NCBI GenBank assembly: GCA_002269645.1
Contig: NIVC01000200.1
Location: forward strand, 1 to 64,000
Length of the DNA: 64,000 nt
Source: Macrostomum lignano
Lineage: Eukaryota
Direction: 5' to 3'
Position numbers and translations under genes: made by a program. Below the pieces are notes generated by a model. The model made no database searches. It saw only the letters and a program-made list of their open reading frames with translations, and was not told the DNA's origin. This document shows, one piece after another, positions 1 through 32,579 of the stretch. The first letter of the stretch is position 1. Every line of letters begins with the position of its first letter.

Positions 1-149
1 TTTGCTTATTTTTAGGTTTGCATAATTAAGCTAAAGAGAGTAAATCCAGAAAAAGAGATGCTAAGCTGTGGACAAGAATGACGCTTAGCACCTCTCCACA
101 GACAATCCCGTTTCTGGTTTATCCAGCCTGGGCTGGTGCACATTTTCGT

Positions 150-575
150 TGGGAGGCCGTAATTACGTGCTGGCTGCTGTCTGGTGCAGGTGCAATTGCG
201 CGCGTGCACTATCCCTGGATGATAACGCTGAAGCAAAGCTTTTTAAGCCCAGGCCGATAGCATACGGATATCGAGATGCTGTTAAGGAACGCCGAGACCT
301 GGACGCTGACGAATCGCTCGAACAGCAGGGTCGATGCGGCGCACGCTGGCCTGCTGCGCGCCGCCTTCAAGATCGGTTACGAAGCGAGTCACCAAATGCG
401 GCACTCTATTGCTGCACCGGCCTGCTCCGTCCAAGCGAGCTGTTGTCCGTCGGCGACTCCAGCTGGCAGGCCATATTTATCCGAGCCGAGTCGTACTGCC
501 CACAGCCGGTGCAGGAGGTGCTGCTGCTGACGCTGCAAGCACCCTACCGGCGGGGGAAGCAGTGGATGACACCCT
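150..575 (+). pseudogene. Frameshifted C-terminal fragment of an RTE-like LINE ORF (second copy about 2545-2975)
   Basis: Stitching frames gives LLRNAETWTLT..RVDAAHAGLLRAAFKIG..TGLLRPSELL..RRRLQLAGH..RAESYCPQPVQEVLLLTLQAPYRRG, which resembles the post-RT region of RTE-clade LINEs (recalled). Confidence 0.55.
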
Positions 576-580
576 AAATT

Positions 581-1005
581 GTGCGCCTAGATTCTACAAA
601 CACTATGTTGACCGACACTTTTGCCATTTTCAAAGCGAACTCGTATCATGAACGGTTTCTTACCGCTCTGAACTCACTCATAAAAACATCCAGACTTAGC
701 ATACCGGAATCAATGTACATCAAGAATAAAAAAACAAGTCTCAATGTCCAGCTTATTCACAGTGGTGCGGGTCATTTGTTCAAGGTATTCTTAGTGTAGG
801 CACGAAGCATTGTAGTGCGCCCGCCTGTTTAAAACTTCCATCCAATGTACCTTCATAATTGGACAATCTGCCCCCCTTTGGACTGTACAGAAACTTTTCT
901 TATATAATTTGATGCATACGTGAAAAATAAAATATATCTCAGACGCTGAACATGGCCGCTGACTAAACCAAACGCGTTGGCTGACTGATTTAATTAAAGC
1001 AATCT
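581..1005 (+). mobile_element. Penelope-like 3' remnant: GIY-YIG tail plus decayed hammerhead-like motif (second copy about 2980-3410)
   Basis: RLSIPESMYIKNKKTSLNVQL resembles the Penelope GIY-YIG C-terminus. CTGAACATGGCC..AACCAAACGCGTTG at 946-979 resembles CTGAAGA-GGCC..GGCC-GAAAC. Confidence 0.4.
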
Positions 1006-1478
1006 ATGTTGGTTTGTTATTTATATTTCTGTGCTTACTCAAGCGAGCTACTTTTAGCTCAACAAAAGCTTCTGATGCATTCGACCTCTACGTTATGTCG
1101 GATATACGTTCAACTCTAGTTGTTGCCTTGATAGGGTTGATTCTGGGCATCTCTGCACTTCGCACCGACAATGATATTGTCATTTTGTTGGATTAAAATA
1201 GCAACAATGCAATTAACCGGTTCTCTCTCTCTCTCTCGCTCTCTCTTGCTCTCTTTCTCTGTCGTTTGGAGCCATTCGACACTCATCTAATACCCAAAAA
1301 GGAAATAATAAAAAAGACAATGAACGAACAGCTTCAACGGAAATAATAACGCATACTTCCTTTCAATCGGTTTATTTTTCAGTTTTGAATCAACTGAATC
1401 GCAGGTTGTCAAAACGCACTCCTCCTATTCTAGGACAATCGACGTCATGCTTCCATCGTTCCCTTAATTAAAACAGAT

Positions 1479-1664
1479 TTATCCGCCATATCCTTCGCAA
1501 GGTACAAAATCCCCTGCGCCAGCGCAACCCAAACCGCTATTACATAATTCAGGATAGCTGATGTAGCAGACTTCTTGCAAGCAGTAACAGCCTTGTCCAT
1601 TGGCTGAATATGCTGCAAACGCAAGAAGCAACACCAGAAGAGAGAGGAAAGCTAGTCTCTGCAT
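1479..1664 (-). CDS. Secreted cysteine-rich peptide precursor, 61 aa (copy 1)
   Basis: MQRLAFLSLLVLLLAFAAYSANG is a signal-like stretch, followed by QGCYCLQEVCYISYPELCNSGLGCAGAGDFVPCEGYGG with 6 Cys. TATA-like box upstream and AATAAA downstream. Confidence 0.7.
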   Translation of the reverse strand: MQRLAFLSLLVLLLAFAAYSANGQGCYCLQEVCYISYPELCNSGLGCAGAGDFVPCEGYGG

Positions 1665-1753
1665 TGAACGGCGCTTGTTGCGATAAAAAAGGGACAAAAC
1701 TTGCTGTCTCTTAGTGATTTCAATCAGCAATACTGCCAAATGCCCATGCAAGG

Positions 1754-1760
1754 CTATATA
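1754..1760 (-). promoter_or_regulatory. TATA-like box of the peptide gene (polyA signal at 1371-1376)
   Basis: TATATAG on the minus strand about 90 nt upstream of the ATG. AATAAA about 100 nt after the stop, followed by a T-rich tract. Confidence 0.45.
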
Positions 1761-3883
1761 GAAAATCAGTCCGGATGCGATAAGCAGATTTATTATCGGA
1801 AAGCTCCTTATTTGTATACACTGCATATACACACGCACACGCCTAGTAGCGATTATTGGTCGGACACACAATCTGAAAGATTTAGAAATTAGCGATGTTG
1901 AATGAACAGGAAAGGCGATAAAGGTAAACAGGCAGAGCACTACGGTAGGAGCACTAGCAGAATGCCGATTCCGAATGCAGAGTTGCGTTAAGAAATTTCC
2001 ACTGACACTGGCAGGTGGAGTTCTGGCTGATCACCACTTTAGCATCGATAGCATACTATACGAGAGTATTTTAGCACGGCGAGATAGGAAAACGAGTTGA
2101 AGATTGAAGATTTAAGATTGGAGATTGATTGAAGACGGAGCATCATTGACTTTGCTAGGGTAAAATATCCAGCGCGACAGATAAAACATTTTTTATTATC
2201 GATAGGAGATGGACAGGCAAGGTGCAAGGTGAGAATATTGAACATTAATTAGCTAGCCCAGGGAGGTGACGGTAAAATGACTGACCGCAAGCTACGTAGT
2301 GTACAAGTGTACATAAAAGCTGCTTTGACTGGCCGACAAAACCATCAAGACAGCACTGCCTTGCAGCTTAATGAAAAGCGGTAGGCTGTGCGGCATTTTG
2401 CTTATTTTTAGGTTTGCATAATTAAGCTAAAGAGAGTAAATCCAGAAAAGAGATGCTAAGCTGTGGACAAGAATGACGCTTAGCACCTCTCCACAGACAA
2501 TCCCGTTTCTGGTTTATCCAGCCTGGGGCTGGTGCACATTTTCGGTTTGGGAGGCCGTAATTACGTGCTGGCTGCTGTCTGGTGCAGGTGCAATTCGCGC
2601 GTGCACTATCCCTGGATGATAACGCTGAAGCCAAAGCTTTTTAAGCCCAGGCCGATAGCATACGGATATCGAGATGCTGTTAAGGAACGCCGAGACCTGG
2701 ACGCTGACGGAATCGCTCGAACAGCAGGGTCGATGCGGCGCACGCTGGCCTGCTGCGCGCCGCCTTCAAGATCGGTTACGAGCGAGTCACCAATGCGGCA
2801 CTCTATTGCTGCACCGGCCTGCTCCGTCCAAGCGAGCTGTTGTGCCGTCGGCGACTCCAGCTGGCAGGCCATATTTTATCGCGAGCCGAGTCGTACTGCC
2901 CACAGCCGGTGCAGGAGGTGCTGCTGCTGACGCTGCAAGCACCCTACCGTCGGGGAAGCAGTGGATGACACCCTAAATTGTGCGCCTAGATTCTACAAAC
3001 ACTATGTTGACGACACTTTTGCCATTTTCAAAGCGAACTCGTATCATGAACGGTTTCTTACCGCTCTGAACTCCACTCATAAAAACATCCAGACTTAGCA
3101 TACCGGAATCAATGTACATCAAGAATAAAAAAACAAGTCTCAATGTCCAGCTTATTCACAGTGGTGCGGGTCATTTGTTCAAGGTATTCTTAGTGTAGGC
3201 ACGAAGCATTGTAGTGCGCCCGCCTGTTTAAAACTTCCATCCAATGTACCTTCATAATTGGACAATCTGCCCCCCCTTTGGACTGTACAGAAACGTTTTC
3301 TTATATAATTTGATGCATACGTGAAAAAATAAAATATATCTCAGACGCTGAACATGGCCGCTGACTAAACCAAACGCGTTGGCTGACTGATTTAATTAAA
3401 GCAATCTATGTTGGTTTTGTTATTTATATTTCTGTGCTTACTCAAGCGAGCTACTTTTTAGCTCAACAAAAGCTTCTGATGCATTCTGACCTCTACGTTA
3501 TGTCGGATATACGTTCAACTCTAGTTGTTGCCTTGATAGGGTTGATTCTGGCATCTCTGCACTTCGCACCGACAATGATATTGTCATTTTCGTTGGGATT
3601 AAAATAGCAACAATGCAATTAACCGGTTCTCTCTCTCTCTCGCTCTCTCTTGCTCTCTTTCTCTGTCGTTTGGAGCCATTCGACACTCATCTAATACCCA
3701 AAAAGGAAATAATAAAAAAGACAATGAACGAACAGCTTCAACGGAAATAATAACGCATACTTCCTTTCAATCGGTTTATTTTTCAGTTTTGAATCAACTG
3801 AATCGCAGGTTGTCAAAACGCACTCCTCCTATTCTAGGACAATCGACGGTCATGCTTCCATCGTTACCTTAATAAAAACAGAT

Positions 3884-4069
3884 TTATCCGCCATATCCTT
3901 CGCAAGGTACAAAATCCCCTGCGCCAGCGCAACCCAAACCGCTATTACATAATTCAGGATAGCTGATGTAGCAGACTTCTTGCAAGCAGTAACAGCCTTG
4001 TCCATTGGCTGAATATGCTGCAAACGCAAGAAGCAACACCAGAAGAGAGAGGAAAGCTAGTCTCTGCAT
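3884..4069 (-). CDS. Secreted cysteine-rich peptide precursor, 61 aa (copy 2)
   Basis: Protein identical to copy 1. Confidence 0.7.
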   Translation of the reverse strand: MQRLAFLSLLVLLLAFAAYSANGQGCYCLQEVCYISYPELCNSGLGCAGAGDFVPCEGYGG

Positions 4070-4425
4070 TTGAACGGCGCTTGTTGCGATAAAAAAGGGA
4101 CAAAACTTGCTGTCTCTTAGTGATTTCAATCAGCAATACTGCCAAATGCCCATGCAAGGCTATATAGAAAATCAGTCCGGATGCGATAAGCAGATTTATT
4201 ATCGGAAAGCTCCTTATTTGGTATATACTGCATATACACACGCACACGCCTAGTAGCGATTATTGGTCGGACACACAATCTGAAAGAAAAATGTGCAGTT
4301 TTGATGTGACTTACTTCTCTGTTCACGAACCTTCCTCTACAGTTGGCGATCGATCTGGCCGCTGACTTTGTCGATGCACATGCTCTCCTAAGTTCCCAAA
4401 AAGTAATTCAAAAAAACTTTTGAAT

Positions 4426-5430: not shown

Positions 5431-5689
5431 ATGTTTGGGATATGCCATTGTGGGGCTGTGGAGAAGCAGACGCCGGAACTTGACTCGTATTGGTTGGCAA
5501 GATACATGGCACTAATTCAAAAAAAAAAATTTTCGGCTCCATTGCGTGAGCGCTAATTGCATTGGCCTTGCCGGGGCGCTAAAATTTGTGCCCATGCCCA
5601 AAGGCTGAAATTGGCGCAGCAATGTTGAAATTGGCGCCAAAAAGTAGCAAGCTGATGTATGCTGCCACTTCTGCGTCCATTGGCACATT

Positions 5690-6720
5690 CCAGCGCTGAT
5701 TTAGGGATCCTGGCGCCGATTTGGGGATCCTGGCGCCAATTTGAGCTTTCCGGCGCCGATTTGAGCTTTCCAGCGCTGGTTTAGGCCTTTTGGCGCTGAT
5801 TTCAGCATTCTGGCGCTGATTTAGGGATCCTGGCGCTGATTTGGGGATCCTGGCCACAAATTTGGCTTCTGGCGCCAATTCGAGCCTTCCCGCGCCAATT
5901 TGAGCTTCCAAGGGCTGGTTTGGGCCTTCTGGAGCTGAATCGGCGATCCTGGCGCCAAATTTGGCTTCCGGCGCCAATTCGAGCTTCCCCGAGCCAATTT
6001 TAGCCTTCCAGCGCCGATTTCAGCTTTCCGGGGCTGTTTTGGGCCTTTGGAGCTGATTTGGGGATCCTGGCGCTGATTCGGCGATCCTGACGCCGATATG
6101 GGGATCCTGTCGACAAATTTGGCTTCCGGCGCCAATTCGAGCTTTTCCGCGTCAATTTGAGATTTTCTGGCGCAAATTTAAGCTTCTCGCGCCAATTTGA
6201 GCTTCCCAGGGCTGGTTTGGGCCTTCTTGAGCTGATTTCAGCATTCCGGCGCTGATTTAGGGATCCTGGCGCTGATTTGGGGATCCTGGCGCCAAATTTG
6301 GCTTCCGGCGCCGATTTGAGCTTTACCGCGCCAACTTGAGCTTCCAAGGGCTGGTTCGGTCCTTCTCGAGCTGATTTGGGGATCCTGGCGCTGATTTGGG
6401 GATCCTGGCGCCAAATTTGGCTTCCGGCGCCAATTTGAGCTTTCCGCGCCAATTTGAGCTTTCCCGCGCCAACTTGAGCTTCCAAGGGCTGGTTTGGTCC
6501 TTCTCGAGCTGATTTGGGGATCCTGGCGCTGATTTGGGGATCCTGGCGCTGATTTAGGGATCCTGGCGCTGATTTAGGGATCCTGGCGCTGATTTGGGGA
6601 TCCTGGCGCCAAATTTGGCTTCCGGCACCAACTCGAGCTTTCCCGCGCCAATTTTAGCCTTCCAGCGCCGATTTCAGCTTTCCAGCGCTGGTTTGGGCTT
6701 TTTAGACATGGCTTCAGGGA
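5690..6720. repeat. GC-rich satellite with about 20-bp periodicity and higher-order organisation
   Basis: GGGATCCTGGCGCTGATTT(G/A) runs are interleaved with CCAAATTTGGCTTCCGGCG / CCAATTTGAGCTTTCCCGCG subunits. Confidence 0.9.
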
Positions 6721-8016
6721 TCGCACTGATTTACATCAATTTGGCACTATAAAAATCAAAAGTGTCATTTTTGGATTTGTTATTGATTGTTGTTGATTGT
6801 TGATTGTTTTGTTATTGATTATTTGTCAATAAGGTATGCTCCATTTAGATCACTATTTGCTGAGAGTTGATTGTTTCATTTTATGCGACTCAGGATCTAC
6901 TAAGTATCTACTACCTTGTTATTATAAATTGAGTTATGGTTTACTTTTACGACTTAATTGTGTAACGCCTTTGTGTTAATCTTTTACTCACTTGATGCAC
7001 TGTTAGCGATGATTAGCGATGAGTGCCACAGAATCGCCCAAATCGCTTTTATCGCTTTTTATCACTTTCTCCAGGTCATTCAGTCATGCTACTCTCGTCC
7101 TACCCCCCTCTCTGTATCTCTACCTATTGTCCTATCTCCTCTCCTTTACAGTATATCACTCTTCTAATCTTTCATCACCCTATCCTACAGGAGTGGGTGG
7201 GGGGAGATGGGGCGCATGAGGGTGGGAATCAGAGTTTTCGCAGACGGAAATCTTCATTATGAAGTTTATTAAGCCTTTGAATAGGCCGACCCTCCCCCCC
7301 CCAACTAAATCCGCCCCTGCATGTAATCCCACAAGGTGTAGTATATATAATGTTTGAAAGAATGTTTGATGTTTGACTGTCTAAATGTTTAAAAGACTGC
7401 CAGCTATCATAGAACCAAGAGAAGCTCATTTTGAATCTCAATCCCCGATTCTTAATGACCTATCCCTGATTCCTCATGTTGGAATCAGAATCCCCGATGC
7501 ACGCGAAGGCGTATTCAGCATGCCAGTGAAGTATGAGACAGACTAGGCCCATGGGCTAAGGTCTGCGATGCTTCACGCCTGCCCCTATCTTCAGCAGGTC
7601 AAGGCTGGTGGGAGGTCTGCACCCTCTATTTGCCTCTGGCAGCCGCAGACCCCCCCCCACGCTGTCTCGCAAGTCGACCCAGGGTACTCGTCCCCGCGTG
7701 TGTTCAAGGCAGTCCCTAGGGCTGCTGGACAGACTGGGCTCCGGCGCTGGCGACCCTATCCAGTGGCTTCGGCCGAATTTGGGTATGCGGGTCTGGCTCG
7801 CCAACCTGCAGGCCGTGGTACTGCTCAACGTACTCTCTAATGCCTAAGGTGTTGACCGTGCCGATGGGCTGGAAGGCCGGGGAGTAGTCCGGTCGCAAGC
7901 GGTCCCCCTCCTGGTGTCGGGCCAGCCTTGAGGGTGCTATTGGCCTACTGCCCGGTCAGGTGGAGCGGCCGGGTGGGTACCGCGCCCCTTTGAGGGTAGC
8001 CCACCAACCTTCTATC

Positions 8017-9537
8017 ATGGCCTTCGAGCCGACTATGGATAAACAAGCTATTTCTAGGGATGGGGACCCTTCTAAACCCCAACCTCAGTCCGAAGGACCG
8101 GCCGGCCCTGCTGGCAGATCCCAACCGACTGATTCAACTGTGGCAAAGGAAGGACCGGCTGGCTCTGCTGGCAGATCCGACCAGAGCTACCAAACTCAAA
8201 ATACCCTAAGACCTGCCAGCTCCGCTGGTGGATCTAAGGGAACCGCGAGCTCTGAGCCTAAAGGACCGGCCAAATCTGGCAGATCCGATGAAGCTCAGCG
8301 GGCTCGGCTTGAGCGCAAACGCGCTAAACAACGCGCCAAAAGGCAGGCCAAGAAGGGAGCTGCGGGGGCCAAAGCGGCGGCGTCCACCATGGATGCTGAA
8401 GCGACTGGAGTCCCAAGGCAACCAGGCGGGCCGGCCGGTGGAAGCTCCAGTAGTTCAGCGGCGGCGCTCCCTGGAGCTGCTGCCGCGGCTGCTGAGGCCG
8501 AAACCACGGCGCAACAAATGGCCACTGCCAACAAGGAGGTTCCTTCGGGAGCTACCTTTGCGGCGAAGGCCAAGGCCAAAATCCCGGGAGTGATCATCCA
8601 AGGTCGCGACCAGGACTGGACCACTGATCAGCTTCAAAAAGTGTGGAGTGCTGTTGACTCCTATCTGATTGAGCTGACTGTCGAGGAGGGAATCTCCATC
8701 GGCGTTGAGCGGATGGTGCTGCGAAGCACATTCGTTCTTATTGCTCCTAGCAGCGAGGAGGACGCTCGGCGGCTGCTCCAGCGGCTACCGACGGTCTCCT
8801 TGGATGCTGACCTTGGCGGAGCTCTTTTTCTTCGCGAGGGCCAGCGTCCAAAGACGATACCCTATGTGGTTTTCGTCCCTGCTAAGAGCACCGCAGCTGG
8901 ACCAGACGTTATTCGCCGGGTCCTACTGCGTCTGAACCCCGACCTCCCTGCTAGTGGACTGGTGTATCACCGTAAAGTCCGCAGGGGGGAGACGGGCAAC
9001 TCAATTGTCCTCGGCCTTTCCAGCACTTGGGCGAGTCGGTACCCTAATGGATCCTCTTTCCAGCTGGGTGCCCTCAAGCTCAAGTTGCGCCGAGGAAAGT
9101 CTGCCAAAGGGAAGGCTACTGCCAACCCCGGCATCTCCGGCAAGAGCGGGGCGCAGTCTAAGGCCCAAGGAAAGGCGCAAGCCGATCCCAAAGCCAAAGC
9201 TGCATCTCGCCCCTCTGCTAGCAGCAGTTCGGCGACCGCGGTAACGGCTCCGGCCGAGCCCCGGGAACCAAACCTGCCAGTCGGAGAAGGAGTTGAGGAC
9301 GAGGCCGGGTCTTCGGAATCCGAGCTCTCCTCGGCCACCTTGGTGGGGTCTGAAGGTAAAGATGCAGGTGAGGAAGCTTCCTCCATCCTGTCATCGGAGC
9401 CTGAGGAGTCTGCTGGGGGGCCGGTGGGGGTGAGGAGGCCATGGACGTCGACCAACTCCCATCTCCCAGTCAAGCCCCAGCGGCCTGGGACGAGGACGAT
9501 CTGTTGTCCAAGTCTCCTTGATGGCCCTGGGCTCTAG
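8017..9537 (+). CDS. ORF1 of element A (basic N-terminus; DUF4780-like core by recall; no CCHC)
   Basis: First ATG of the 7960 ORF is at 8017. Contains RAKQRAKRQAKK and a ..LLRLNPDLP.. core typical of Loa ORF1. Confidence 0.75.
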   Translation: MAFEPTMDKQAISRDGDPSKPQPQSEGPAGPAGRSQPTDSTVAKEGPAGSAGRSDQSYQTQNTLRPASSAGGSKGTASSEPKGPAKSGRSDEAQRARLERKRAKQRAKRQAKKGAAGAKAAASTMDAEATGVPRQPGGPAGGSSSSSAAALPGAAAAAAEAETTAQQMATANKEVPSGATFAAKAKAKIPGVIIQGRDQDWTTDQLQKVWSAVDSYLIELTVEEGISIGVERMVLRSTFVLIAPSSEEDARRLLQRLPTVSLDADLGGALFLREGQRPKTIPYVVFVPAKSTAAGPDVIRRVLLRLNPDLPASGLVYHRKVRRGETGNSIVLGLSSTWASRYPNGSSFQLGALKLKLRRGKSAKGKATANPGISGKSGAQSKAQGKAQADPKAKAASRPSASSSSATAVTAPAEPREPNLPVGEGVEDEAGSSESELSSATLVGSEGKDAGEEASSILSSEPEESAGGPVGVRRPWTSTNSHLPVKPQRPGTRTICCPSLLDGPGL

Positions 9538-9560
9538 CCAGATATTGCATTTAATACAGT

Positions 9561-12500
9561 ATGACTAAGCTCCACGCTGCCAAAGGAGCGACATTCTGTC
9601 TGCAAATAAATTTACAGCATTGCGTATCTGCGTCAGTAAATCTGATGAAGATTGCTGAGCTGTACAGGCCAGGCCTCATCCTGATCCAGGAACCCTGGAT
9701 GCGCAACGGTAAGTTGCCCAACATTCCCTCTGGCTACTCTGATTTTTATGTGTGTGGCCCGGGGAACAGCCGCCCTAGAGCGGCTATCCTCGCTGCTAGC
9801 CATCTCCAGGCTTGGCTGAGGACTGATCTCTCTGATGGAGACCTTTGCGTCATCCAATCTAATCATTTCTCTCCGCGTACGTGTCTTGTTGCCTCGGTTT
9901 ATATCCCAGGCGACAGAGACCCTGCTCCCGAGAGTTTACTGCGCCTTGCGCAGTACTGCGAGTCCCAGAACGCTGAGCTGTGCTTAGGGGGCGACCTCAA
10001 CGCGCACCACAAGCACTGGGGCAGCAAAGATACCAACACTAGAGGAGAGGAGCTTCTGGCCCTCATCTCTAACACAAACCTCATGCTCTGCAACCGCGGC
10101 AGCACTCCTACCTTTAATAATGGCAGATGGACCGAGGTCCTCGACGCCACACTCGTTACCCCAAGACTCTTTGACAGAGTCAAGGAGTGGAGAGTCTGGT
10201 CTGAGGAGCCCTCCCTGTCTGACCACTGCTTTATCGCCTTTAATATCGCGGACACTAAAACCCAGTCTCCGATCACTTGGAGACGCAATATCCGCAACAC
10301 TGATTGGGCGGCCTACAAGGCTGCCCTTGATCTGCACCTGCAGGAACTCACGGACTTACGTCCGATTGAGACCTGCGAGGATGTGGATCATATGGCTGAG
10401 ACGCTGACAGGTTGCATTATTGCAGCCTACGAAGCGGCTTGTCCTGCTCGCGCCTACAGAGGCAAGACCTCGGCGCCGTGGTGGAACCCGGAGCTGGGGA
10501 AACTCAGGCGGAAGGCCAAAAGCCTTCATCGCCGTGCCATGAAGACCGGAAACCCGGAGGACATGGAGCTTTTCCGGCAAGCCTCCCGCAATTTCAAATC
10601 TGAAGTGCGCAAGGCCAAGGAATGTAAGTGGCGCCAATTCTGCAATGAATTGGATCAAGACAGACCTACTTCTAGGCTTGTCAAGGCCCTTACAATGGAC
10701 AAAATGTCCAAATTAGCCATGATCAAAAAAGATGATGGCTCTCTTACTAAAGACCCTGAAGAAGTGCTTCAGCATATGCTTAGCACATTCTTCCCGAGGG
10801 TACCTACTGCTAGACCGGAGCCCAACCATTCGATGGATGGAGCCACCCTAGCGGCGGGCATTGTCACTGAAGACCTAATCGCTCGTGCGGTCAGAACCTT
10901 CAAACCCTTCAAATCTCCTGGACCTGATGGTATCTACCCTGTTCTCCTTCGTGAAGCAGCCAAGATACCCTCGTTCCTGAGACTCACCCGCAATCTTATG
11001 CGGGCCTCTATCCAGCTGGGATACGTTCCCAAAAGCTGGACTGAAGCTCGAGTAGTCTTTATTCCCAAACCTGGGAAGGGTGACTACCAAAGCGTCAAGG
11101 CCTTCCGGCCAATTAGCTTAACGTCAGCAATGCTTAAGCTCACTGAGAGGCTTATTCTCTGGCGGCTGCTCTCCTGCGAGCTGACAGCGATGCCCCTCAG
11201 CAATAATCAGCACGCCTTCCGTACCGGGAGGTCGACTGACAGCGCCCTGCATGCGATTGTCGAAAAGATTGAACGGGCGGTACTGGGTGACGGTTACGCC
11301 CTGGCTCTCTTTCTTGACATTGTTGGCGCCTTCGACAACGTTATCTTTGAAGCGTTTCAGAGGGCCCTTCAAAATCGCAAAGCTCATGCTACCCTCATAC
11401 GGTGGATCATGTACATGATCTCCAACCGTACGGTCACTGCCCAACTTCTTGGGCAAACTGCCTCCACCAGAGTCTGTAAGGGTGGACCCCAAGGCGGAGT
11501 CCTCACCCCGACGCTCTGGAACCTGGTCATGGACGCTCTTCTGAGTGACTCCCGACCTGACCCCGTCTTCAAAGTCGGGTATGCTGATGACGTCACGGCC
11601 ATTGTGGCAGGACCGTCTCCCAGCACGCTCAGGGATCTGATGCAGAGCTTTATCCGCAAAGCAGAATCCTGGGCCAATGACAATGGTTTGGAACTCTCTG
11701 AGCCCAAAACCGTTGCCATTATGTTTACCAGCAGACTACGCTGGAACATACGTCCTCTGCAGCTCTACGGCAGAGATATTGCCTTCGCGCACCAGACCAG
11801 ATGTCTCGGGGTCACACTTGACCACCGGCTCAACTGGTCCTTCCACGTGAAAGCAAAAGCTAAGCGTGCCTCAGCCATCCTGGCCCAGCTCCGACGAGCA
11901 CTTGGCACTTCTTGGGGTCTATCCCCAAAGCGGCTTTGGTGGATCTATACTTCCGTAGTTAGACCTGCCATTACGTACGCCTCTGTTGTCTGGGTTAGCG
12001 CTACCCAGGTCAAAAGCCATGCAGACCTGCTCAACACGATCCAAGGCAGAGCGTGTAGGCTCATCTGCAACGCCACCAGGTCCACGCCCTTTGCTGGCAT
12101 GGGGGCCTTTCTTAATCTTCCGCCTCTTGACCTCTTCATCAGGGGTGAGGCGGCTAGAACGACGCGGCGTCTAATTGATGCCGGCGTCAAATTCATTTAC
12201 ATGAGAGCACCTGCTAAGCGGAACCTTGTCCCGCATAGCGATCTGTGCCTCAACTTTCTCAACGAGTGTCAGGCCAATCGCGTCTTCACCGATGGCATTG
12301 CCTCAACGCTCAACCTGAGACAGCGCTACTCCGTAGCTATCGACTCGCGCGATAACATCAATGACCATTGGAACCCTGGTGAGCTTCATTGCTACACCGA
12401 CGGTTCTAAGCAGTCAGCCAACACCGGCTTTGGTGTTGGAATCTTTCTGAACGGGAGGGTCATCGGTACTCACGCTCAATACACTGGGGTCAACTCCAGT

Positions 12501-13301
12501 GTTTTCCAAAATGAAGTTCTGGCCATCAGCTCCTGCACTGCAGAGCTTCTCGCCACTGGCGTTACTGGTAAGAACATCATTTTCCATTCGGACAGCCAAG
12601 CTGCCTTGCACGCCATCAGTGGCTGCAGCACCAACTCTGCTACAGTCCTTGACTGTATCAAACTCCTCAATGTGTTGGGTTCCGCCAACAAAATTACCCT
12701 TAAGTGGGTTCCGGGGCATGTGGGGATCCGAGGAAATGAGTTGGCTGACACCCTTGCAAAAGTTGGTGCCTCCGGCTCCTCTCTCGGCCCCGAACCTCTT
12801 GTCCCGATTCCTGGCTGTGTCATCGACTCGCGCATCAAAGCGTGGATCAGGACTCAGCACCGCTCGACTTGGGCGAACCGCACGAACTGCAGGCAATCCA
12901 GAGGCGCTGTCCCTCAGCCCTCTCACCAGCTCCGGAAGCTCCTCTTGCGCCTCTCGCGCAGAGACATCCGGGCTGCCACCATGACCCTCTCTGGTCACGG
13001 CTGCTTCTCCAGGCACCAGTACCTGCAGGGCAACGCCACCAACGCCACCTGTAGTTTCTGCAACTCAGGTGACGAAACCGCTGAGCATTTCGTCAGCATC
13101 TGTCCCGCCTTCACGCGGGCCAGACTCACTTACCTCGGGCCACACACATCTATTACTGAAGCGTGCAAACCCGAAAACTTTAATCAGCTCATGCGCTACC
13201 TTCGGGCCACCCGCAGGGCTGAACTCTCCTTTCCAGAGAGCACCATAGCTGCTGGCGACACTGGGGGACCTCCCTGGGCGGCGCCAACCCTCCGTCCATA
13301 G
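9561..13301 (+). CDS. ORF2: APE endonuclease, reverse transcriptase, RNase H, C-terminal CCHC finger; intact, 1246 aa
   Basis: IQEP, GGDLNAHH, SDH; PGPDG, FRPISL, QGGVL, YADD; YTDGS, SDSQAAL, GNELAD; CSFC-x8-H-x4-C. Confidence 0.95.
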   Translation: MTKLHAAKGATFCLQINLQHCVSASVNLMKIAELYRPGLILIQEPWMRNGKLPNIPSGYSDFYVCGPGNSRPRAAILAASHLQAWLRTDLSDGDLCVIQSNHFSPRTCLVASVYIPGDRDPAPESLLRLAQYCESQNAELCLGGDLNAHHKHWGSKDTNTRGEELLALISNTNLMLCNRGSTPTFNNGRWTEVLDATLVTPRLFDRVKEWRVWSEEPSLSDHCFIAFNIADTKTQSPITWRRNIRNTDWAAYKAALDLHLQELTDLRPIETCEDVDHMAETLTGCIIAAYEAACPARAYRGKTSAPWWNPELGKLRRKAKSLHRRAMKTGNPEDMELFRQASRNFKSEVRKAKECKWRQFCNELDQDRPTSRLVKALTMDKMSKLAMIKKDDGSLTKDPEEVLQHMLSTFFPRVPTARPEPNHSMDGATLAAGIVTEDLIARAVRTFKPFKSPGPDGIYPVLLREAAKIPSFLRLTRNLMRASIQLGYVPKSWTEARVVFIPKPGKGDYQSVKAFRPISLTSAMLKLTERLILWRLLSCELTAMPLSNNQHAFRTGRSTDSALHAIVEKIERAVLGDGYALALFLDIVGAFDNVIFEAFQRALQNRKAHATLIRWIMYMISNRTVTAQLLGQTASTRVCKGGPQGGVLTPTLWNLVMDALLSDSRPDPVFKVGYADDVTAIVAGPSPSTLRDLMQSFIRKAESWANDNGLELSEPKTVAIMFTSRLRWNIRPLQLYGRDIAFAHQTRCLGVTLDHRLNWSFHVKAKAKRASAILAQLRRALGTSWGLSPKRLWWIYTSVVRPAITYASVVWVSATQVKSHADLLNTIQGRACRLICNATRSTPFAGMGAFLNLPPLDLFIRGEAARTTRRLIDAGVKFIYMRAPAKRNLVPHSDLCLNFLNECQANRVFTDGIASTLNLRQRYSVAIDSRDNINDHWNPGELHCYTDGSKQSANTGFGVGIFLNGRVIGTHAQYTGVNSSVFQNEVLAISSCTAELLATGVTGKNIIFHSDSQAALHAISGCSTNSATVLDCIKLLNVLGSANKITLKWVPGHVGIRGNELADTLAKVGASGSSLGPEPLVPIPGCVIDSRIKAWIRTQHRSTWANRTNCRQSRGAVPQPSHQLRKLLLRLSRRDIRAATMTLSGHGCFSRHQYLQGNATNATCSFCNSGDETAEHFVSICPAFTRARLTYLGPHTSITEACKPENFNQLMRYLRATRRAELSFPESTIAAGDTGGPPWAAPTLRP

Positions 13302-13975: not shown

Positions 13976-14874
<899 letters not shown>

Positions 14875-14875
<1 letters not shown>

Positions 14876-17800
14876 TGCCGTTCCCAACCCCGTGCCAAAC
14901 TAGGAGCGGGGCGCTGAGGGCGAACCTTAACGGCCAGCCCAATGATGACACTGCCACCAGCAACCAAATAAATAATCCGCCGCCGGCGAACCAACCTGTT
15001 AACCTGCACATTATTCAGATCAACCTGCACCACGCCCTTGCAGCATCTAGCAACCTTTCAGGCACCTTTGCCAACAAGGAAGTTGACATCTACCTTATTC
15101 AGGAACCGTATACCCGCAAGGGGAAGCCGACCTGCCTGCCGCCAGGCTATCAGGTTCTGTACCTCTGCGCGAACGACACCCCCAGAGCTATCGCCCTCGT
15201 CAAAAACGACCTCCCGGCCACTATTATGCCAATGTTTTGCTCTAAAGACATGTGTACTTTCTCAGTCTTTGACTTGACCTTCGTTTCCGCTTACCTGGAC
15301 ATTCAGGAGGACGTCCCTCCCCCCCTCCTGCAGGAGCTGGCGGACTTCTGTAATCTCCAGGATCGGAAGCTTATCGTTAGCTGCGATGCTAACGCCCACA
15401 ACACTGCCTGGTCTAGTAGCGATACTAACAGGCGCGGTGACTTACTAATTGATTTCATTAACTCCTCCTCGTTACACATTTGCAACAGAGGCAGCAAACC
15501 CACATTTATTGTCTCTAATCGGCGTGAGGTTATCGACCTCACTCTCGTCTCCAACAACGCCCTCAATCAGGTCCACAGCTGGCTGGTTAGGGATGACCTC
15601 CCATCGCTTTCCGACCACTCGTACATTCAGTACAGCATCAGCTCCGTCGGAGCCCGTCATGAGAACCGGGACCGCCTTAATTTGAAAAAGGCCGACTGGA
15701 CAGGTTTTCGAAGAGACCTGCCAAAACTCCTGACCGAAGCCAACTTACCGGACTCCAGCGAGGATCTCCCTGGCATTGAGCATCGGTGCAACTCCCTCGT
15801 TGAGATCCTAAACACCGCCATACGCGCTAACGCCCCTAAGCTGTTTTGCAGGAAGAAATACTCTCCTTGGTGGAGTCAAGAGCTCACTCGCATGAAGAAA
15901 AACACCCGCCGACTGCAACGCCTCGCAAACGGCTCGAATACCCCAGAGGATTGGGAGAACTACCACTCTGCTCTGAGGATGTACAAAAGTGCTATCCGAA
16001 GGGCTAAGAAGACCACCTGGAAAGCCTACTGCGCCGGCCTGGAAGGGCAACACCCCACAGCCCGGCTGGTCAGGACTCTCAGGCACGACACGCTAGCTCA
16101 GTGTAACTCCCTTCTGCACCTGGATGGTAACTACACTACCAGTGCCGAAGGTTCGCTAAATCTTCTTTTCTCCACCTGCTTTCCGCAGGTTGACGAACCG
16201 GAGTACGTGGTCGATGACCACAGGCCTTGTGATCACAAGCTTTTCCAGCAGTGCGCCACCCCCAGCTACTCCAGCTGGCAGCAAATTCTTTTAAACCGTA
16301 TAAATCGTCTGGCCCTGACAATATCGCCCCCTGTATCCTGCAGGAGGCGCTAAAGCTGCAAAACTTTGCTGATTCTTTCTCTAAATTGCTTGTTGACTGT
16401 TATACCACAGGTTACATTCCCACAATCTGGAGAATGTCCAGAGTCGTGTTCATCCCGAAACCTGCTAAGGGTGACTACACCAACGTGAAATCCTTCCGGC
16501 CCATCAGCCTCACTTCCTTTTGTGTTAAGCTGATGGAGAGGCTCATCCTGTGGAGGCTTCGAGAGTGCGACCTGCGCTCCGACCCTGTCAGTAAGTACCA
16601 GTACGCCTTCCAGCCTGGGAGGACGACTGAGCATGCTCTCCACGCCATTACCTCCAAAATTGAGAGTGCCATCCTTAGCAAACAACTCGCTTGCGGGTTG
16701 TTCGTTGACTTCGAAGGAGCATTTGACAATGTCCTCTTCGCTCCTTCAGAAATTCTCTTTCCCGCAGGAATGTAAGACACAGCATTGTTCGCTGGATTTA
16801 TTTTATGATCCGCAAAAGGTTTGTGACATCCACACTTATGGGCGTTACCCTCACCCGGGCGGTGATGAAAGGCGGCCCGCAAGGTGGCGTGCTAACTCCA
16901 CTTCTCTGGAATCTCGTCATGGACGAACTTCTAACCGCTGACATTCCCAGCAGTATCACCAGGGCGGGCTACGCCGATGACGTTGCCGCGGTCGTCAGCG
17001 GACCCGACCCCGCCACTCTGCGCAACCTGATGCAGCAATTCGCCGACAAGGCGGCCGACTGGGCTACACAGCATGGCCTAAAAATCAGCGTCACTAAGAC
17101 TGTCGCTGTCGTTTTCACCAAGCGCCGTAAGTGGGAGATGAAAAACCTCACTGTCTATGGCAGAAACATCCCCTTCAAGAAGGAGGTCAAATACCTCGGT
17201 GTGACGCTAACGCATGACCTGCGCTGGACGAAGCACCTTGATAACGTCATCGGTCGGGCAAAACGCTGCTTTGCCCAGCTGCGCAGAGCCATCGGGCCGA
17301 CTTGGGGCCTCTCGCCTAGAACGGTCCGTTGGATTTATACCGGCATCATCCGGCCCAGTATCACATACGCGAGTCTCATCTGGACTAGCGTGCTGGAGCA
17401 GAAGGCCGCCCGTCAGCGGCTGTACCAGCTTCAGGGCAGCATTTGCCGTGCCATCACAGGTGCGTACCCGTCCACCCCTTACGAGGGGCTGAACACTATC
17501 CTTAACCTACCTCCGCTTCACCTATTTATTAGGGCGGAGGCTATGAAGTCTGCCTCCCGGCTTATCAGAGATAAAACGTTAAATAACGCGCCCTCTGGCT
17601 TTATGCCAATGAAAACATTAATCCCGCATATGGACTTTGTCCGCCGCGACCTTAACAACATCCACATGGACCTGTGCAATGTGGATAGTCGACCTCCCGC
17701 CCTCAACATCAGGAGGGGCTTCAAGACCGCCATCCCTGGCCGAGACAACATTCCGCTGGATGTCGGTGTGAACCGGCGCAGCCAGGGCATTCACTGCTTC

Positions 17801-18691
17801 ACCGACGGCTCGCTGTTCAACGGCCGCGCTGGAGCGGGTATTGCCATTTTCCACGAGGGTAAGATGCTTCTCCAGGAAAGTCTGCACCTCGGTGAGAACA
17901 CCTCAGTTTTCCAAGCTGAAATTTGCGCCATTGAGCAGTGTGCCCAGCAACTGTTTCAGGCGAACATTAATAATTTTGACATTAATTTCTACACTGATAG
18001 CCAAGCTGCTATTAAGGCCTTAACCACTGAGAATATCTCCGCTGCTACAGTATCTCAATGCCACCGCAGTGTGCAATCTCTCTCAGTCCTTAACAGGATT
18101 AGAATTATCTGGACACCTGGTCACAGCAACATCCTGGGCAACGAGCTCGCGGACTCTCTCGCCAAGGAGGGCAGCAACCCAGACGGCAACCACCGTCTGA
18201 TGAGGCTACCCACCCCCAGGTCGCAAGTCACCCGCCATATCAACAGGTGGCTCCATCAGCAGCACCAGCTCCACTGGAACAGCTGCACCGAGTACAGGCA
18301 GAGCCGCTCTGCCATGCCTAACCTGAACAGGAAAGTCTCTGATTATCTGATTTCGCTTAACAGAACCGACCTCAGGGAGATGTGCATGGTCCTAACCGGC
18401 CACGGATTCTTCCAGAGACATATATCGTTGCAAACCGGTTGCCCTCCCACCTGTCCCTTCTGTGGCATAGGAGAGGAGACCGCGGAGCATCACGTCACCT
18501 TCTGCCCTTACTTCAACAAGGCGCGGCACAAATACCTCGGCCACCCCCAGCGGATGGACGAGCTGACCACCGCGGACAATATCCGAGACCTCCGCGCCTT
18601 CGTCCGGGACTCCGGCCGGATGAGGGTCGCCGATGCCTCCACTGCGGACCTGCCGACTACTGGCGGGGACTGGGCGCACCCCCAAGGCTAA
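14875..18691 (+). pseudogene. ORF2 of element B (APE-RT-RNase H-CCHC), broken by two frameshifts (about 16240 and about 16740)
   Basis: Consecutive ORFs 14875-16353, 16251-16775 and 16805-18691 carry IQEP/SDH, FRPISL/FDNV, and YADD/FTDGS/CPFC-H-C. Confidence 0.9.
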
Positions 18692-28200: not shown

Positions 28201-31200
28201 AATCAGTCACTAAAATGCATGGAGGCAGTATAAGCACAGACGTGCACAGTGAGGGTGCCTGCATGAGACTGTAATGCTGGCGTTGTTGTTGTTGCGGAAG
28301 GTGGTCTAGGGCTGCCTATGCAGGCAGTCCAAGAACCTAGCCACCAGATCGCCATCGGCCAAGTCCTCCAGTTGGTGTAGGTCCGTCGCGTGCCGAACTC
28401 TTGCCAGGGCCGGACATTCGAGGAAGTGGTCCTTGTCTTCATAGAGGTCGCACCGGGGGCATCTGCTATCCTCCCTAGAGCCAATTCGGTGCTGATAGTA
28501 CGCCGTGGAAGGATCGTGACCGGCACGCATTTGGGCTATGGAAACCTGAAGCGCGCGGGGGCGAGCGGGCATCGAGGGGGTCTTGCTGTAGATCCGCTTC
28601 AGCCGGTCATTCAGGAGAGGCTTGTAGTTGATGAGACGGCGTATACGGCTGCGGGCGGCCTCGATGTCGATCTCTAGAATGTCCTGGGGGAGCAGACAGG
28701 CGTTCTTGGCCTCGACGTCGGCTCTCTCGTTACCGGGAGTCCCAGAATGACCTGGGATCCACTGCAGGACCACGTCGGCGTGGCTCTCCACCTGTGTCAG
28801 CTTGCGCTTGAGCGACTCGAGCAGAGGGTTCAGGGAGTGCTGCCGACCTTTGAGCGCCGCAATGGCCGATCGGCTGTCGGTGAGGATCAGGGCAGAGTCC
28901 TGCTTAGTCTCAAGGATGTGATCCAGGGCGAGGTGTAGAGCTGAGAGTTCAGCTTGGAACGAGCTACACCAACGCCCGGTAGCAGCTCCCTCAATCCAAA
29001 CCACCTGGCCCGAAGTAGGGGCGACCGCCACACAGGCTGCCCCTCCATTCTCAGTTCCTTCTGATGCAGACCCGTCGGTGAAGTAGTGGATCTTGCGGTC
29101 GCCCCATGATTGAATGGTGTCTTCCGTCGCCGACCGCCTGGTCTCTGGCGGATCGTTCCTGGAGATCGGCTGAGTCAGGTGTTCGCAAAGGGTGACCCGA
29201 TCCTCAATTCTCGGAAGCCAGGGCTCGTTCCTGATCCAGTTCGATTCCCGGCGTGGGCAATGCAGAATCTGCTCGGATTCCAGCTTGGCTTGGTCCCGGA
29301 GGCCTTTGTTAGCTTTGAGCCTGCGCCGGCTTTGGTCTTCGCAGAGGCTGCGCCAAGGGTCGTAGGCAGGCCGCCTGAGGGCCTTCTCGACAGCCAGCAG
29401 GGCTCTTCTGTGTCCTTCAACGGAAATGGGAACGGTTCCGAGTTCGAGGTAAACGGCCTCCTCCGGAGTGGATTTAGGGAGGCCGGCCACGATTCTGAGT
29501 GCTGCCCGTTGAGCCCGTTCGAGTTCGTTCAACCGGCTTTTGGATAGCCAAGGTAGCCAGGCCGCTGCCGCGTGCCATATGACAGATTCGACCATGGCGG
29601 TGTACGTACGCATCAGCAGCTTACGGTCCCAGCCCCAGCTCCTTTGCGCTAGCGCTCTCACGATGTTGGTGCGTTTGGCCATCTTTTCTTTGACCGTTTT
29701 GACTTGTTGAGCAAAGATGAGGTATTTGAGAGACTCAGTGAAGCGAAGTTGAGTGCCGGCAAGATGGAGATCAGGTGGCCGATCAAAGTCGGCCCGGTTC
29801 CTAGAGAAGAGGCACGCCTGGGTTTTGGCTGGGTTAACCGAGATACGGAGGTCTCTGGTCCAGGTTTCGATGAAGTCCAGGGCGCTCTGAAGCTTTCTGG
29901 TGAGGTTCTGAAGGCTACTGTCAGTAGCCCATAGGCAGAGGTCGTCAGCGAATCCTCCAAGTTGAACTTCAGTTTCAGGGAAGCCAGTCCAATCATTGAC
30001 GTAAAGGAGGAAAAGGACCGGGGAGCACACCGCTCCCTGAGGAACTCCACTGGTGATGCGGCGCCACTTCCCGGTGGTGTTGCCGATTTTGGCACAGATA
30101 GTTCTACCTTCCAGAAAGTTGGCTAGCCAATGCGTCATACGATCGGGCATGTCTTCGTCCATCATCCGATTAATGAGCTTGTCGTGCCAAACTGTGTCGA
30201 AGGCTTTGGAGCAATCTAGGGCGGTAGCCGCTGTCTTGAGGGGAGGTTTGCGTTCCCACCCGTCTTGGATCGATTGGACCAGACGGGCGACCTGCTCCTC
30301 ACAGCTGCGGCCTCTTTGGAAGCCCGCTTGCCAGTGTTTGAGGATGTTGAAGGTCTCAATCCAATGAAAAAGGCGGTCCAGGACCATGCGTTCCATAATC
30401 TTGGCGCAGATCGATGTGAGACTGACAGGTCTATAGCTATCGCAACTCTGCGGGTCTTTACCGTCCTTCAGGAGGGGCACCACTATAGCTTGTTTCCAGA
30501 TGCCAGGGCAGTGGCCAATCTTCCAGCTACGGTTGAAGAGTTTGAGCCAGGCCTCCGTCCAGCTTTCTGGCAGGTGCTTGAAGAATGCCGCCTCTATCTT
30601 GTCCGGCCCTCCTTTCTTGTTGATGTCCAGGTGGTCGATAGCTCTCCCGAGTTCACTCTTGGTGAAGGGGGCGTCATAGTCGCTGGCATGTGACGATTGG
30701 AGGTGAGTTTTTTGTAGCGGCGATCACCCGGTTGTTGGTCGGGTCTGCAGACCTTGGCAAAGTGTCTGCCAAACGCTTCGGCCTTTTGTTTGTCAGTCTT
30801 ACATTCTTTGCCTTGGACCAAGAGGGTCTCGTTGGGGGTCGCCCCGTTGTTACCCGTGTTCAAACATTTAATGGTCCTCCAGACGGCCTTAGGGTCGGAG
30901 GAGGAGGAGATCTTGTCGAGGTACTCTCTCCAGAACTGGGCTTTCTTCTCAGCGCACCGGCTGGTCAGCTCTTGGGTCTTCATGTTCCAGTCCTCGACCG
31001 GGCTTCCCCTTCTACGGAGGTTGTTCCTCTCATCTCTCAGCTGGGAAAGCTCCTCGTCCCAGAAGGGGCGGTTATGAGGGGAGACTTTCTTCAGCGGGAT
31101 GGATTCTTTAGCCGCCTGCTTCATCGTCGTGCAGAGCCGGGCAATCTGCTGTTTGATAGTGCCGGTGTTCAGGTCAGCAGAGTGCTCTTCTAGGTAGGAG

Positions 31201-32537: not shown

Positions 32538-32579
32538 CGGTCCCGGGTTGGGTTCGACATCACCGGCCATAAGGAGCAG
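32538..32579 (-). other. 2A-like ribosomal skipping (StopGo) motif LLLMAGDVEPNPG|P
   Basis: Exact D(V/I)ExNPGP consensus with upstream leucines. Confidence 0.85.

What the first reader, a model, noticed from the sequence alone, without database searches (positions are those of the whole stretch)
1479..1664. Duplicated compact gene for an unrecognised secreted 6-Cys peptide
Seen: a 23-aa signal-like stretch, then a 38-aa peptide with spacing C-x-C-x4-C-x7-C-x5-C-x8-C, an N-terminal Gln and a C-terminal Gly-Gly. TATA and AATAAA signals flank it, and both tandem copies are intact while neighbouring TE fragments are broken. Established: N-terminal Gln can cyclise to pyroglutamate and C-terminal Gly is an amidation donor. 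Inference: a toxin-, antimicrobial- or reproductive-type peptide; I do not recognise this Cys framework.
Basis: partly seen in the sequence, partly recalled or inferred. Interest (0 to 1): 0.7.

Follow-up and report, generated by a model that had tools for sequence, protein, structure and literature searches.

The report
Orphan six-cysteine secreted peptide ORF
A 61-codon reading frame in the flatworm Macrostomum lignano looks like a gene for a small, acidic, secreted, disulfide-rich peptide with no known relatives, but nothing available here shows that it is expressed, and its two copies are too nearly identical to say anything about selection.

Summary
On the minus strand, 1479..1664 and 3884..4069 encode the same 61-aa product: a signal-like N-terminus, then six Cys spaced C-x-C-x4-C-x7-C-x5-C-x8-C, ending in Gly-Gly. 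A TATATAG lies 96 nt upstream and an AATAAA 102 nt downstream. The window is Macrostomum lignano: a neighbouring 7TM gene is about 99% identical to a UniRef M. lignano protein.

By my crude criteria such an ORF arises by chance about 0.001 times per 64 kb. That favours a real gene, but a 764-Mb assembly would still hold about a dozen chance cases.

No relative was found in Pfam, PDB, 5.8 G or 1.84 G proteins, or metagenome contigs. AlphaFold confidence is low and Foldseek found nothing.

The two copies differ by 27 one-base gaps and 4 mismatches. Other repeats in the window show the reverse ratio, so the differences look like long-read consensus errors. "Both copies intact" is therefore not evidence of constraint.

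The mature peptide is acidic (pI 4.05, net -4, no K/R/H), which argues against a cationic antimicrobial. The cleavage site, and so the N-terminal Gln, is ambiguous.

Verdict: a plausible, unconfirmed lineage-restricted secreted peptide gene.

The parts
1479..1664 (-). Copy 1 of the 61-codon ORF (ATG 1664..1662, stop TAA 1481..1479)
1596..1664 (-). Signal-like N-terminus, residues 1-23. It has Arg3 and a hydrophobic core at residues 4-18. Candidate cleavage sites lie after residues 17, 20 or 23.
   Evidence: Hydropathy and -3/-1 scan. AlphaFold helix 3-21. Weak Pfam DIM match to residues 1-22, E 0.07, below the cut-off.
1482..1595 (-). Proposed mature peptide, 38 aa, with six Cys and a C-terminal Gly-Gly. 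Mass about 3.9 kDa, pI 4.05, net charge -4.
1754..1760 (-). TATA-like TATATAG, 96 nt upstream of the ATG. An Inr-like GCAGT follows about 36 nt downstream, around 1726..1722.
   Evidence: read from the sequence
1371..1376 (-). AATAAA, 102 nt downstream of the stop codon
3884..4069 (-). Copy 2 of the ORF, identical in all 186 bases. The base just upstream of the ATG differs by a 1-bp indel (TTCAATG in copy 1, TTCAAATG in copy 2).
4160..4166 (-). TATA-like TATATAG of copy 2
3775..3780 (-). AATAAA of copy 2
1..1880 (.). First visible copy of the repeated block. It is cut by the window start and followed by 516 bp (1881..2396) seen only once.
2397..4287 (.). Second copy of the repeated block (period about 2396-2407 bp). 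It is 98.3% identical to the first, with 4 mismatches and 27 gap openings.

Best explanation
The ORF is a lineage-restricted (orphan), intronless gene of Macrostomum lignano for a small secreted peptide.

Inferred mechanism, step by step:
1. RNA polymerase II starts about 30-36 nt downstream of the TATATAG, near 1727.
2. The result is an unspliced mRNA of roughly 370 nt, polyadenylated shortly after the AATAAA at 1376..1371.
3. The N-terminal 17-23 residues act as a signal peptide and are removed in the ER.
4. The remaining 38-44 residues fold into a compact domain held by three disulfides.
5. There are no basic residues, so there are no prohormone-convertase sites. The product is released as one piece, not cut from a larger prohormone.
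6. It acts outside the cell as an acidic (net -4), Gly/Tyr/Cys-rich gland product.

The most likely role is a secretory-gland product of the rapidly evolving kind known in this species, such as prostate/seminal fluid or another gland secretion. A cationic membrane-active antimicrobial is unlikely.

Shown: the ORF, its Cys pattern, the flanking signals, its rarity by chance, the acidity and the lack of relatives. Inferred: transcription, secretion, the cleavage site, disulfides, any pyroGlu or amidation, and the biological role.

The 'duplication' adds no functional information, because the two copies are effectively identical.
For: -: the ORF and exact Cys spacing in both copies. The Cys count is even and no Cys lies in the hydrophobic leader.
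- Arg3, then a 15-residue core with mean hydropathy of about 3, then a polar c-region with three sites that fit the -3/-1 rule.
- AlphaFold puts a helix on residues 3-21 and a beta-hairpin on 26-35.
- this is the only signal-like ORF among 379 in the window, and 0 of 200 simulated windows gave a signal-like ORF with at least 6 Cys.
- 0.24% of simulated ORFs meet the Cys criterion. Combined with 0.42 signal-like ORFs per window, chance gives about 0.001 per window.
- AATAAA 102 nt after the stop (P 0.13 by chance) and a TATA-like box 96 nt upstream. No ATG lies between the predicted start site and the ORF's ATG.
- the organism is M. lignano.
- (PMC5977470): of 76 prostate-limited transcripts in this species, 31 have no BLAST hit; of the 65 with an identified ORF, 38 have a predicted signal peptide.
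- (PMC7336406): reproduction-related genes evolve fast and are hard to trace between Macrostomum species. Lack of relatives is therefore expected for this class.
Against: - No evidence of transcription or translation could be obtained.
- No relative was found in the 5.8 G or 1.84 G protein collections. The first holds UniRef M. lignano entries, so the peptide is not in that annotation.
- Pfam, PDB sequence and Foldseek searches were all empty.
- AlphaFold confidence for the Cys-rich part is low, pLDDT 54-73.
- The locus sits in repeat-rich DNA beside apparent retroelement remnants.
- The TATA is a loose TATATAG, and the -3 position before the ATG is T in copy 1.
- Look-elsewhere effect: about 0.001 chance cases per 64 kb means about a dozen in a 764-Mb assembly.
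- The heuristics are my own, not SignalP.
Confidence: 0.55

Rival explanations
1. A chance ORF in non-coding, recently duplicated, repeat-derived DNA. The hydrophobic start, six Cys codons and flanking A/T-rich motifs are coincidence, and nothing is made from it.
For: - No relative, domain or structural match by any search.
- Not among the UniRef M. lignano proteins held in the searched collection.
- Low AlphaFold confidence.
- A chance rate of about 0.001 per window still predicts about a dozen such ORFs per genome (assembly size from PMC5730564).
- The identity of the two copies carries no information.
Against: - The joint rarity of signal-like start, even Cys count, TATA-like box, AATAAA and an ATG-free leader.
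- It is the only ORF of 379 in the window to pass even the signal-like filter.
- Small orphan secreted proteins are common in this species.
Confidence: 0.3
2. Real coding sequence but a different gene model. Either the ORF is trans-spliced or belongs to a larger transcription unit, or translation starts elsewhere.

- The M. lignano spliced leader ends in ATG. A CAG acceptor directly follows the ORF's own ATG (ATGCAG|AGA). Leader-ATG joined to AGA CTA GCT would read MRLAF..., in frame.
- In copy 1 the frame is also open 92 codons upstream, with an in-frame ATG at 1823.
For: - (PMC8629364): the spliced leader sequence ends in ATG, and the acceptor motif is [T/C]TNCAG. ATGCAG matches 5 of 6 positions.
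- (PMC5730564): 38.8% of genes in the Mlig_3_7 annotation are trans-spliced, and many lie in polycistronic units.
- a 153-codon open frame in copy 1.
Against: - The upstream extension is lost in copy 2 through a 1-bp difference.
- The upstream part has no Pfam match.
- Trans-spliced genes in this species are mostly conserved ones, and this ORF has no relatives.
- The pyrimidine tract ends about 24 nt before the CAG.
- The in-frame coincidence follows simply from the second codon being CAG.
Confidence: 0.1
3. This rival concerns 'duplicated' only and is independent of the rivals above. There is one gene, not two. The second copy is an assembly artefact, or an identical, extremely recent copy whose apparent differences are long-read consensus errors left unpolished because short reads map equally to both copies.
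For: -: the two blocks differ by 4 mismatches and 27 gap openings.
- Other repeat pairs in the same window show the reverse ratio: 30 to 2, 110 to 13 and 33 to 7.
- the gaps are single bases, many of them in homopolymers or doublings of a neighbouring base, and each copy has its own set.
- the published M. lignano assemblies are PacBio-based (Canu, then Pilon), with 180 Mb of redundant blocks.
- The homology starts exactly at window base 1, so the true copy number is not visible.
Against: - Assemblers usually collapse tandem repeats rather than create them.
- A 516-bp spacer (1881..2396) and a clean right-hand junction at 4287/4288 look like an ordinary tandem duplication.
- The few true substitutions (for example 1461, 1469, 1819) could be real differences between two copies.
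Confidence: 0.4

Closest known systems
Prostate-limited putative seminal fluid proteins of M. lignano (Mlig-pro transcripts; PMC5977470), and fast-evolving reproduction-related genes of Macrostomum (PMC7336406)
   Same: Same species; a short secreted product with a signal peptide; no detectable homologue; expected to be lineage-restricted.
   Different: Expression site is unknown. No sequence similarity could be tested, because those transcripts are not available to these tools. Nothing links this ORF to the prostate.
Inhibitor cystine knot (knottin) peptides
   Same: Six Cys in about 30-40 residues, secreted after a signal peptide. AlphaFold suggests beta-hairpin content.
   Different: The first inter-Cys loop is a single residue. 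There is no adjacent Cys pair, which many animal knottins have (from my knowledge). No Pfam, PDB or Foldseek match. Connectivity is unknown.
Cysteine-stabilised alpha/beta (CS-alpha-beta) defensins
   Same: A small secreted six-Cys invertebrate peptide that contains a C-x-C element.
   Different: The defining C-x3-C is absent. The C-x-C lies at the N-terminal end rather than the C-terminal end. The peptide is acidic rather than cationic, and no helix is predicted in the right place.
Sea-anemone defensin-like channel peptides (BDS/APETx type)
   Same: These also begin with a C-x-C element, in a peptide of about 40 residues with six Cys (recalled from memory; a lead, not a test).
   Different: They end in an adjacent Cys pair, which is absent here. 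They come from a different phylum, and no sequence or fold match was found.
Water-borne acidic six-Cys pheromones (Aplysia attractin, Euplotes pheromones)
   Same: Small, acidic, three-disulfide secreted signalling peptides of similar size. This is an analogy of type only.
   Different: Those are helical bundles. There is no sequence similarity. The comparison is from memory.

Membership tests
Classical secretory precursor (cleavable signal peptide) | A positively charged n-region, a hydrophobic h-region of 7-15 residues, and a polar c-region with small residues at -3 and -1 | tested here: met
   Arg3; residues 4-18 have mean Kyte-Doolittle hydropathy of about 3.0-3.3; three compatible sites after residues 17, 20 and 23. 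AlphaFold helix 3-21.
Classical secretory precursor (cleavable signal peptide) | Positive call and a single cleavage site from a trained predictor (SignalP) | not testable with these tools
   No such predictor is available. The weak Pfam DIM match to residues 1-22 (E 0.07) shows only a signal-like composition.
Inhibitor cystine knot (knottin) | Six Cys with loop lengths in the family's range and I-IV, II-V, III-VI connectivity | tested here: inconclusive
   Six Cys are present. The first loop is one residue, shorter than the usual range as I recall it. Connectivity cannot be determined. Foldseek against PDB found 0 matches, but on a low-confidence model.
CS-alpha-beta defensin | A C-x3-C in a helix paired with a downstream C-x-C in a strand | tested here: not met
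   The spacing is C-x-C-x4-C-x7-C-x5-C-x8-C. There is no C-x3-C, and the C-x-C comes first. No Pfam defensin hit.
EGF-like domain | Pfam EGF profile match, with the C-x-C late in the domain and a Gly/aromatic signature | tested here: not met
   No Pfam hit at E up to 10. The C-x-C is the first element and lacks the signature.
Cationic antimicrobial peptide | Net positive charge of the mature peptide | tested here: not met
   pI 4.05, charge -4.3 at pH 7, no Lys, Arg or His.
Amidated / pyroglutamyl neuropeptide prohormone | Mono- or dibasic processing sites flanking the peptide | tested here: not met
   No basic residue after Arg3. Only signal-peptidase cleavage is possible.
Amidated / pyroglutamyl neuropeptide prohormone | A C-terminal Gly exposed as amide donor, and an N-terminal Gln after cleavage | tested here: inconclusive
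   The precursor ends in Gly-Gly-stop, so a Gly donor is exposed. Gln24 becomes N-terminal only if cleavage is after Gly23, one of three candidate sites. The modifications themselves are not testable here.
M. lignano putative seminal fluid proteins (Mlig-pro) | Prostate-limited expression by in situ hybridisation | not testable with these tools
   No expression data or transcript sequences are reachable.
Tandemly duplicated gene pair | Two independent copies whose divergence pattern matches other duplicates in the genome | tested here: not met
   4 mismatches and 27 gap openings here, against 30/2, 110/13 and 33/7 in other repeat pairs of the window.

The most novel reading that the evidence does not exclude
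The peptide could be the unidentified 'small negatively charged molecule' that Wunderer et al. 2019 (PMC6410801) proposed. [quoted passage not shown] This ORF encodes a small (about 3.9 kDa), secreted, disulfide-stabilised product with net charge -4 and no basic residue. Nothing here speaks to expression in the tail plate, so this is only a reading that the evidence does not exclude. More generally, it could be the founder of a new three-disulfide fold.
Probability: 0.03. Interest if true: 0.75.

Novelty: new member of a known kind. Interest (0 to 1): 0.3.

Why it matters
If it is expressed, it adds an unannotated, lineage-restricted secreted mini-protein to a flatworm model. In that species small orphan secreted proteins are already implicated in seminal-fluid-mediated sexual conflict, and a small anionic releasing factor for temporary adhesion is still missing. 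Its Cys framework matches no curated family, so a solved structure might define a new small disulfide fold.

If it is not expressed, it is a useful calibration case. A perfect-looking mini-gene can arise at about 0.001 per 64 kb, and near-identical copies in a long-read assembly must not be read as conservation.

Tried and rejected
**Searches for relatives, all empty**
- Pfam on the precursor and on the mature part.
- PDB sequence search.
- The 5.8 G protein word-index search and exhaustive phmmer on 1.84 G representatives.
- Back-translated scan of metagenome contigs: 600 pattern hits, none confirmed.
- Paralogues in the window by tblastn and by a Cys-pattern regex: only the two copies.
- Full-text search for the peptide string.

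**Structure**
- AlphaFold on the precursor and on the mature part gave low confidence.
- Foldseek against PDB gave 0 hits for both models.

**Attempts to reach the M. lignano genome through exact-protein look-ups**
- Tried with the peptide, the neighbouring ORF2, the 7TM ORF and the UniRef hit. None is on record.
- An independent assembly of the locus, transcripts and orthologues therefore could not be examined.

**Is the 2.4-kb unit a repeated element?**
- It shows no similarity to the rest of the window by blastn or blastx.
- The retroelement nature of 1..700 was not confirmed by Pfam.
- A local blastp put the YVDD fragment on the YADD box of the window's ORF2, but without significance (E 2.2).
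- Rfam and tRNA scans found nothing.

**Readings rejected**
- An LTR pair for the two blocks, because the blocks contain reverse-transcriptase-like remnants.
- Cationic antimicrobial, CS-alpha-beta defensin and EGF: see the membership tests.

**Not attempted**
- A codon-usage test. The window holds only two host coding sequences to train on.
- The third homologue search was left unused, because no remaining question justified its cost.

Full report
**1. What is there**

On the minus strand, 1479..1664 is an ATG-to-TAA frame of 61 codons. It encodes MQRLAFLSLLVLLLAFAAYSANGQGCYCLQEVCYISYPELCNSGLGCAGAGDFVPCEGYGG. A base-for-base identical ORF lies at 3884..4069.

The frame ends in Gly-Gly-stop. 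A tblastn and a Cys-pattern scan of all six frames found no further copy or paralogue in the 64 kb.

**2. Organism**

Two intronless 7TM ORFs lie further along the window. The one at 39114..40244 is about 99% identical to a UniRef protein of Macrostomum lignano, apart from a 26-residue stretch that the UniRef model omits. The window is therefore M. lignano, a free-living flatworm.

Its published assemblies are PacBio-based. Mlig_3_7 was built with Canu and polished with Pilon. It is 764 Mb, more than half repetitive, and carries 180 Mb of redundant blocks (PMC5730564).

**3. Is it more than chance?**

I listed every Met-started ORF of 40-150 aa in the window, 379 in all.

- I applied a crude signal-peptide filter: a basic residue near the start, an uncharged 12-residue core with mean hydropathy of at least 2.3, and then a site that fits the -3/-1 rule. 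Only the two copies of this ORF pass.
- In 200 second-order Markov simulations of the window, 0.42 ORFs per window passed that filter. None also had at least 6 (even) Cys at 10% or more.
- The Cys criterion alone is met by 0.24% of simulated ORFs.
- The joint chance rate is therefore about 0.001 per 64 kb.

Flanking signals:

- AATAAA lies 102 nt after the stop, which has P of about 0.13 at random anchors.
- TATATAG lies 96 nt before the ATG. This is looser than TATAWAW; a strict TATA plus an AATAAA has P of about 0.004.
- No ATG lies between the expected start site and the ORF's ATG.

These numbers favour a real gene. They still leave about a dozen chance look-alikes in a 764-Mb assembly. The filters are my own, not a trained predictor.

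**4. The 'duplication'**

Bases 1..1880 and 2397..4287 are copies of one block, with a period of about 2396-2407 bp. A 516-bp spacer (1881..2396) separates them. The homology starts at window base 1, so further copies upstream cannot be excluded.

The copies differ by 4 mismatches and 27 gap openings. The gaps are single bases, many of them in homopolymers or doublings of a neighbouring base, and each copy has its own set.

Other repeat pairs in the same window show the opposite pattern:

| Pair | Mismatches | Gap openings |
|---|---|---|
| 1..1880 / 2397..4287 (this block) | 4 | 27 |
| 53161..54288 / 55373..56500 | 30 | 2 |
| The two 7TM paralogues | 110 | 13 |
| 41046..41899 / 43350..42493 | 33 | 7 |

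The differences between the two blocks therefore look like residual long-read consensus errors, not divergence. Either the duplication is extremely young or it is an assembly artefact.

In either case, "both copies intact" carries no information about selection.

- With about 31 events in 1880 bp, a clean 186-bp stretch has p of about 0.05.
- Clean runs of 221 nt (1224..1444) and 205 nt (675..879) occur in non-coding parts.
- The retroelement-like remnants at 1..700 are the same truncated pieces in both copies, so they were broken before the duplication.
- Their identity rests on reading the motifs YVDD and ETWTLT. Pfam did not confirm them, and a local alignment to the YADD box of the window's ORF2 is not significant.

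**5. The product**

- Signal-like leader: Arg3 and a 15-residue hydrophobic core (residues 4-18) are followed by YSANG.
- Cleavage: three sites fit the -3/-1 rule, after Ala17, Ser20 and Gly23.
- Charge: whichever site is used, the mature peptide has pI 4.05, net charge -4 and no Lys, Arg or His.
- Composition of the 38-mer: 6 Cys, 8 Gly, 4 Tyr, about 3.9 kDa.
- Processing: with no basic residue there is no prohormone-convertase site. The product would be released by signal peptidase alone.
- A classical cationic antimicrobial peptide is unlikely.
- The C-terminal Gly-Gly would expose a Gly amide donor without trimming. Whether it is used cannot be told from sequence.

**6. Relatives and fold**

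Nothing was found by any route:

- Pfam at E up to 10. The only hit was a sub-threshold match of residues 1-22 to the leader of the DIM family.
- PDB sequences.
- The 5.8 G protein collection, which does hold UniRef M. lignano entries.
- Exhaustive phmmer over 1.84 G representatives. For a 61-residue query against that library, only close relatives could reach E of 0.001 or better, so distant ones are not excluded.
- Metagenome contigs.
- Full-text literature search for the peptide string.

AlphaFold without an alignment gave mean pLDDT of 64-66. It placed a helix on the leader and a beta-hairpin on the first four Cys. Foldseek against PDB returned nothing. At that confidence, the empty result is uninformative.

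**7. Comparison with known kinds**

- The spacing lacks the C-x3-C of CS-alpha-beta defensins.
- It lacks the adjacent Cys pair seen in many animal knottins and in sea-anemone defensin-like peptides.
- It lacks the late C-x-C with a Gly/aromatic signature of EGF domains.

These family definitions are from my knowledge. The absence of the motifs is read from the sequence.

What it resembles in kind is the class of small, orphan, signal-peptide-bearing gland products already documented in M. lignano.

- Of 76 prostate-limited transcripts, 31 had no BLAST hit.
- Of the 65 with an identified ORF, 38 had a predicted signal peptide (PMC5977470).
- Reproduction-related genes evolve fast and are hard to trace across the genus (PMC7336406).

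Membership in that group needs expression data, which I could not obtain.

**8. Alternative gene models**

The M. lignano spliced leader ends in ATG, and acceptors look like [T/C]TNCAG (PMC8629364). The ORF begins ATGCAG|AGA. A leader joined at that CAG would read MRLAF..., in frame. This is a curiosity that 5'-end data can settle.

In copy 1 the frame is open 92 codons upstream, with an in-frame ATG at 1823. A 1-bp difference removes this in copy 2, and the extension has no Pfam match.

**9. Limits**

Exact-protein look-ups for the peptide, the neighbouring ORF2, the 7TM ORF and the UniRef hit all returned nothing. The M. lignano genome and transcriptomes are out of reach of these tools. The two decisive tests, a transcript and orthologues that keep frame and cysteines, remain undone.

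**10. Verdict**

The best reading, at a probability of about 0.55, is an unannotated, lineage-restricted gene for a small, acidic, three-disulfide secreted peptide. A chance ORF stands at about 0.3, and a different gene model at about 0.1.

The duplication is not evidence of function and may be technical.

The most novel reading not excluded is that this is the small negatively charged releasing factor postulated for M. lignano temporary adhesion (PMC6410801). I put that at about 3%.

Noticed in passing
window 39114..40244 (-) and 33453..34523 (-): Two intronless 7TM paralogues with weak Pfam 7tm_1 hits and 89% DNA identity. The first is about 99% identical to a UniRef M. lignano 'G_PROTEIN_RECEP_F1_2 domain-containing protein', but keeps 26 residues that the UniRef model skips. 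The second diverges from its paralogue after about residue 311 and looks C-terminally truncated. The only other hit was a second M. lignano protein at 46% identity, so this may be a lineage-restricted receptor family.
   Followed up: partly
window 7960..13301 (+), 14036..18691 (+), 28306..32837 (-): Three non-LTR retrotransposon copies with endonuclease, reverse transcriptase and RNase H domains. The first has an intact 1246-aa ORF2, preceded by a 525-aa ORF with no Pfam hit. The other two are split into several ORFs.
   Followed up: partly
window 49630..51483 (-) and 51476..53130: A gypsy-like fragment (integrase H2C2 zinc-binding domain and a PNMA/gag-like region) that abuts a 33-bp minisatellite of about 53 copies.
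   Followed up: no
window 53161..54288 and 55373..56500: A pair of 1.13-kb direct repeats, 97% identical (30 mismatches, 2 gaps), flanking about 1.1 kb. This may be the LTR pair of a small non-autonomous element. It served here as a control for normal divergence.
   Followed up: partly
window 41046..43350 and 54285..55858: 0.85-kb inverted repeats (95%) around blocks of a 151-bp tandem repeat. Related copies lie at 54.3-55.9 kb. This looks like a foldback-like or TIR-bearing repeat family.
   Followed up: no
window 58074..59180; 5688..6694; 60001..62000: A 28-bp satellite (about 40 copies, 91% matches); a nested 20/79/436-bp repeat array; and a 2-kb stretch of only 30% G+C.
   Followed up: no
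window 1662..1672 (-) and 4067..4078 (-): The start codon is directly followed by CAG (ATGCAG|AGA), which matches 5 of 6 positions of the M. lignano trans-splice acceptor motif. Because the spliced leader ends in ATG, trans-splicing there would keep the reading frame.
   Followed up: partly
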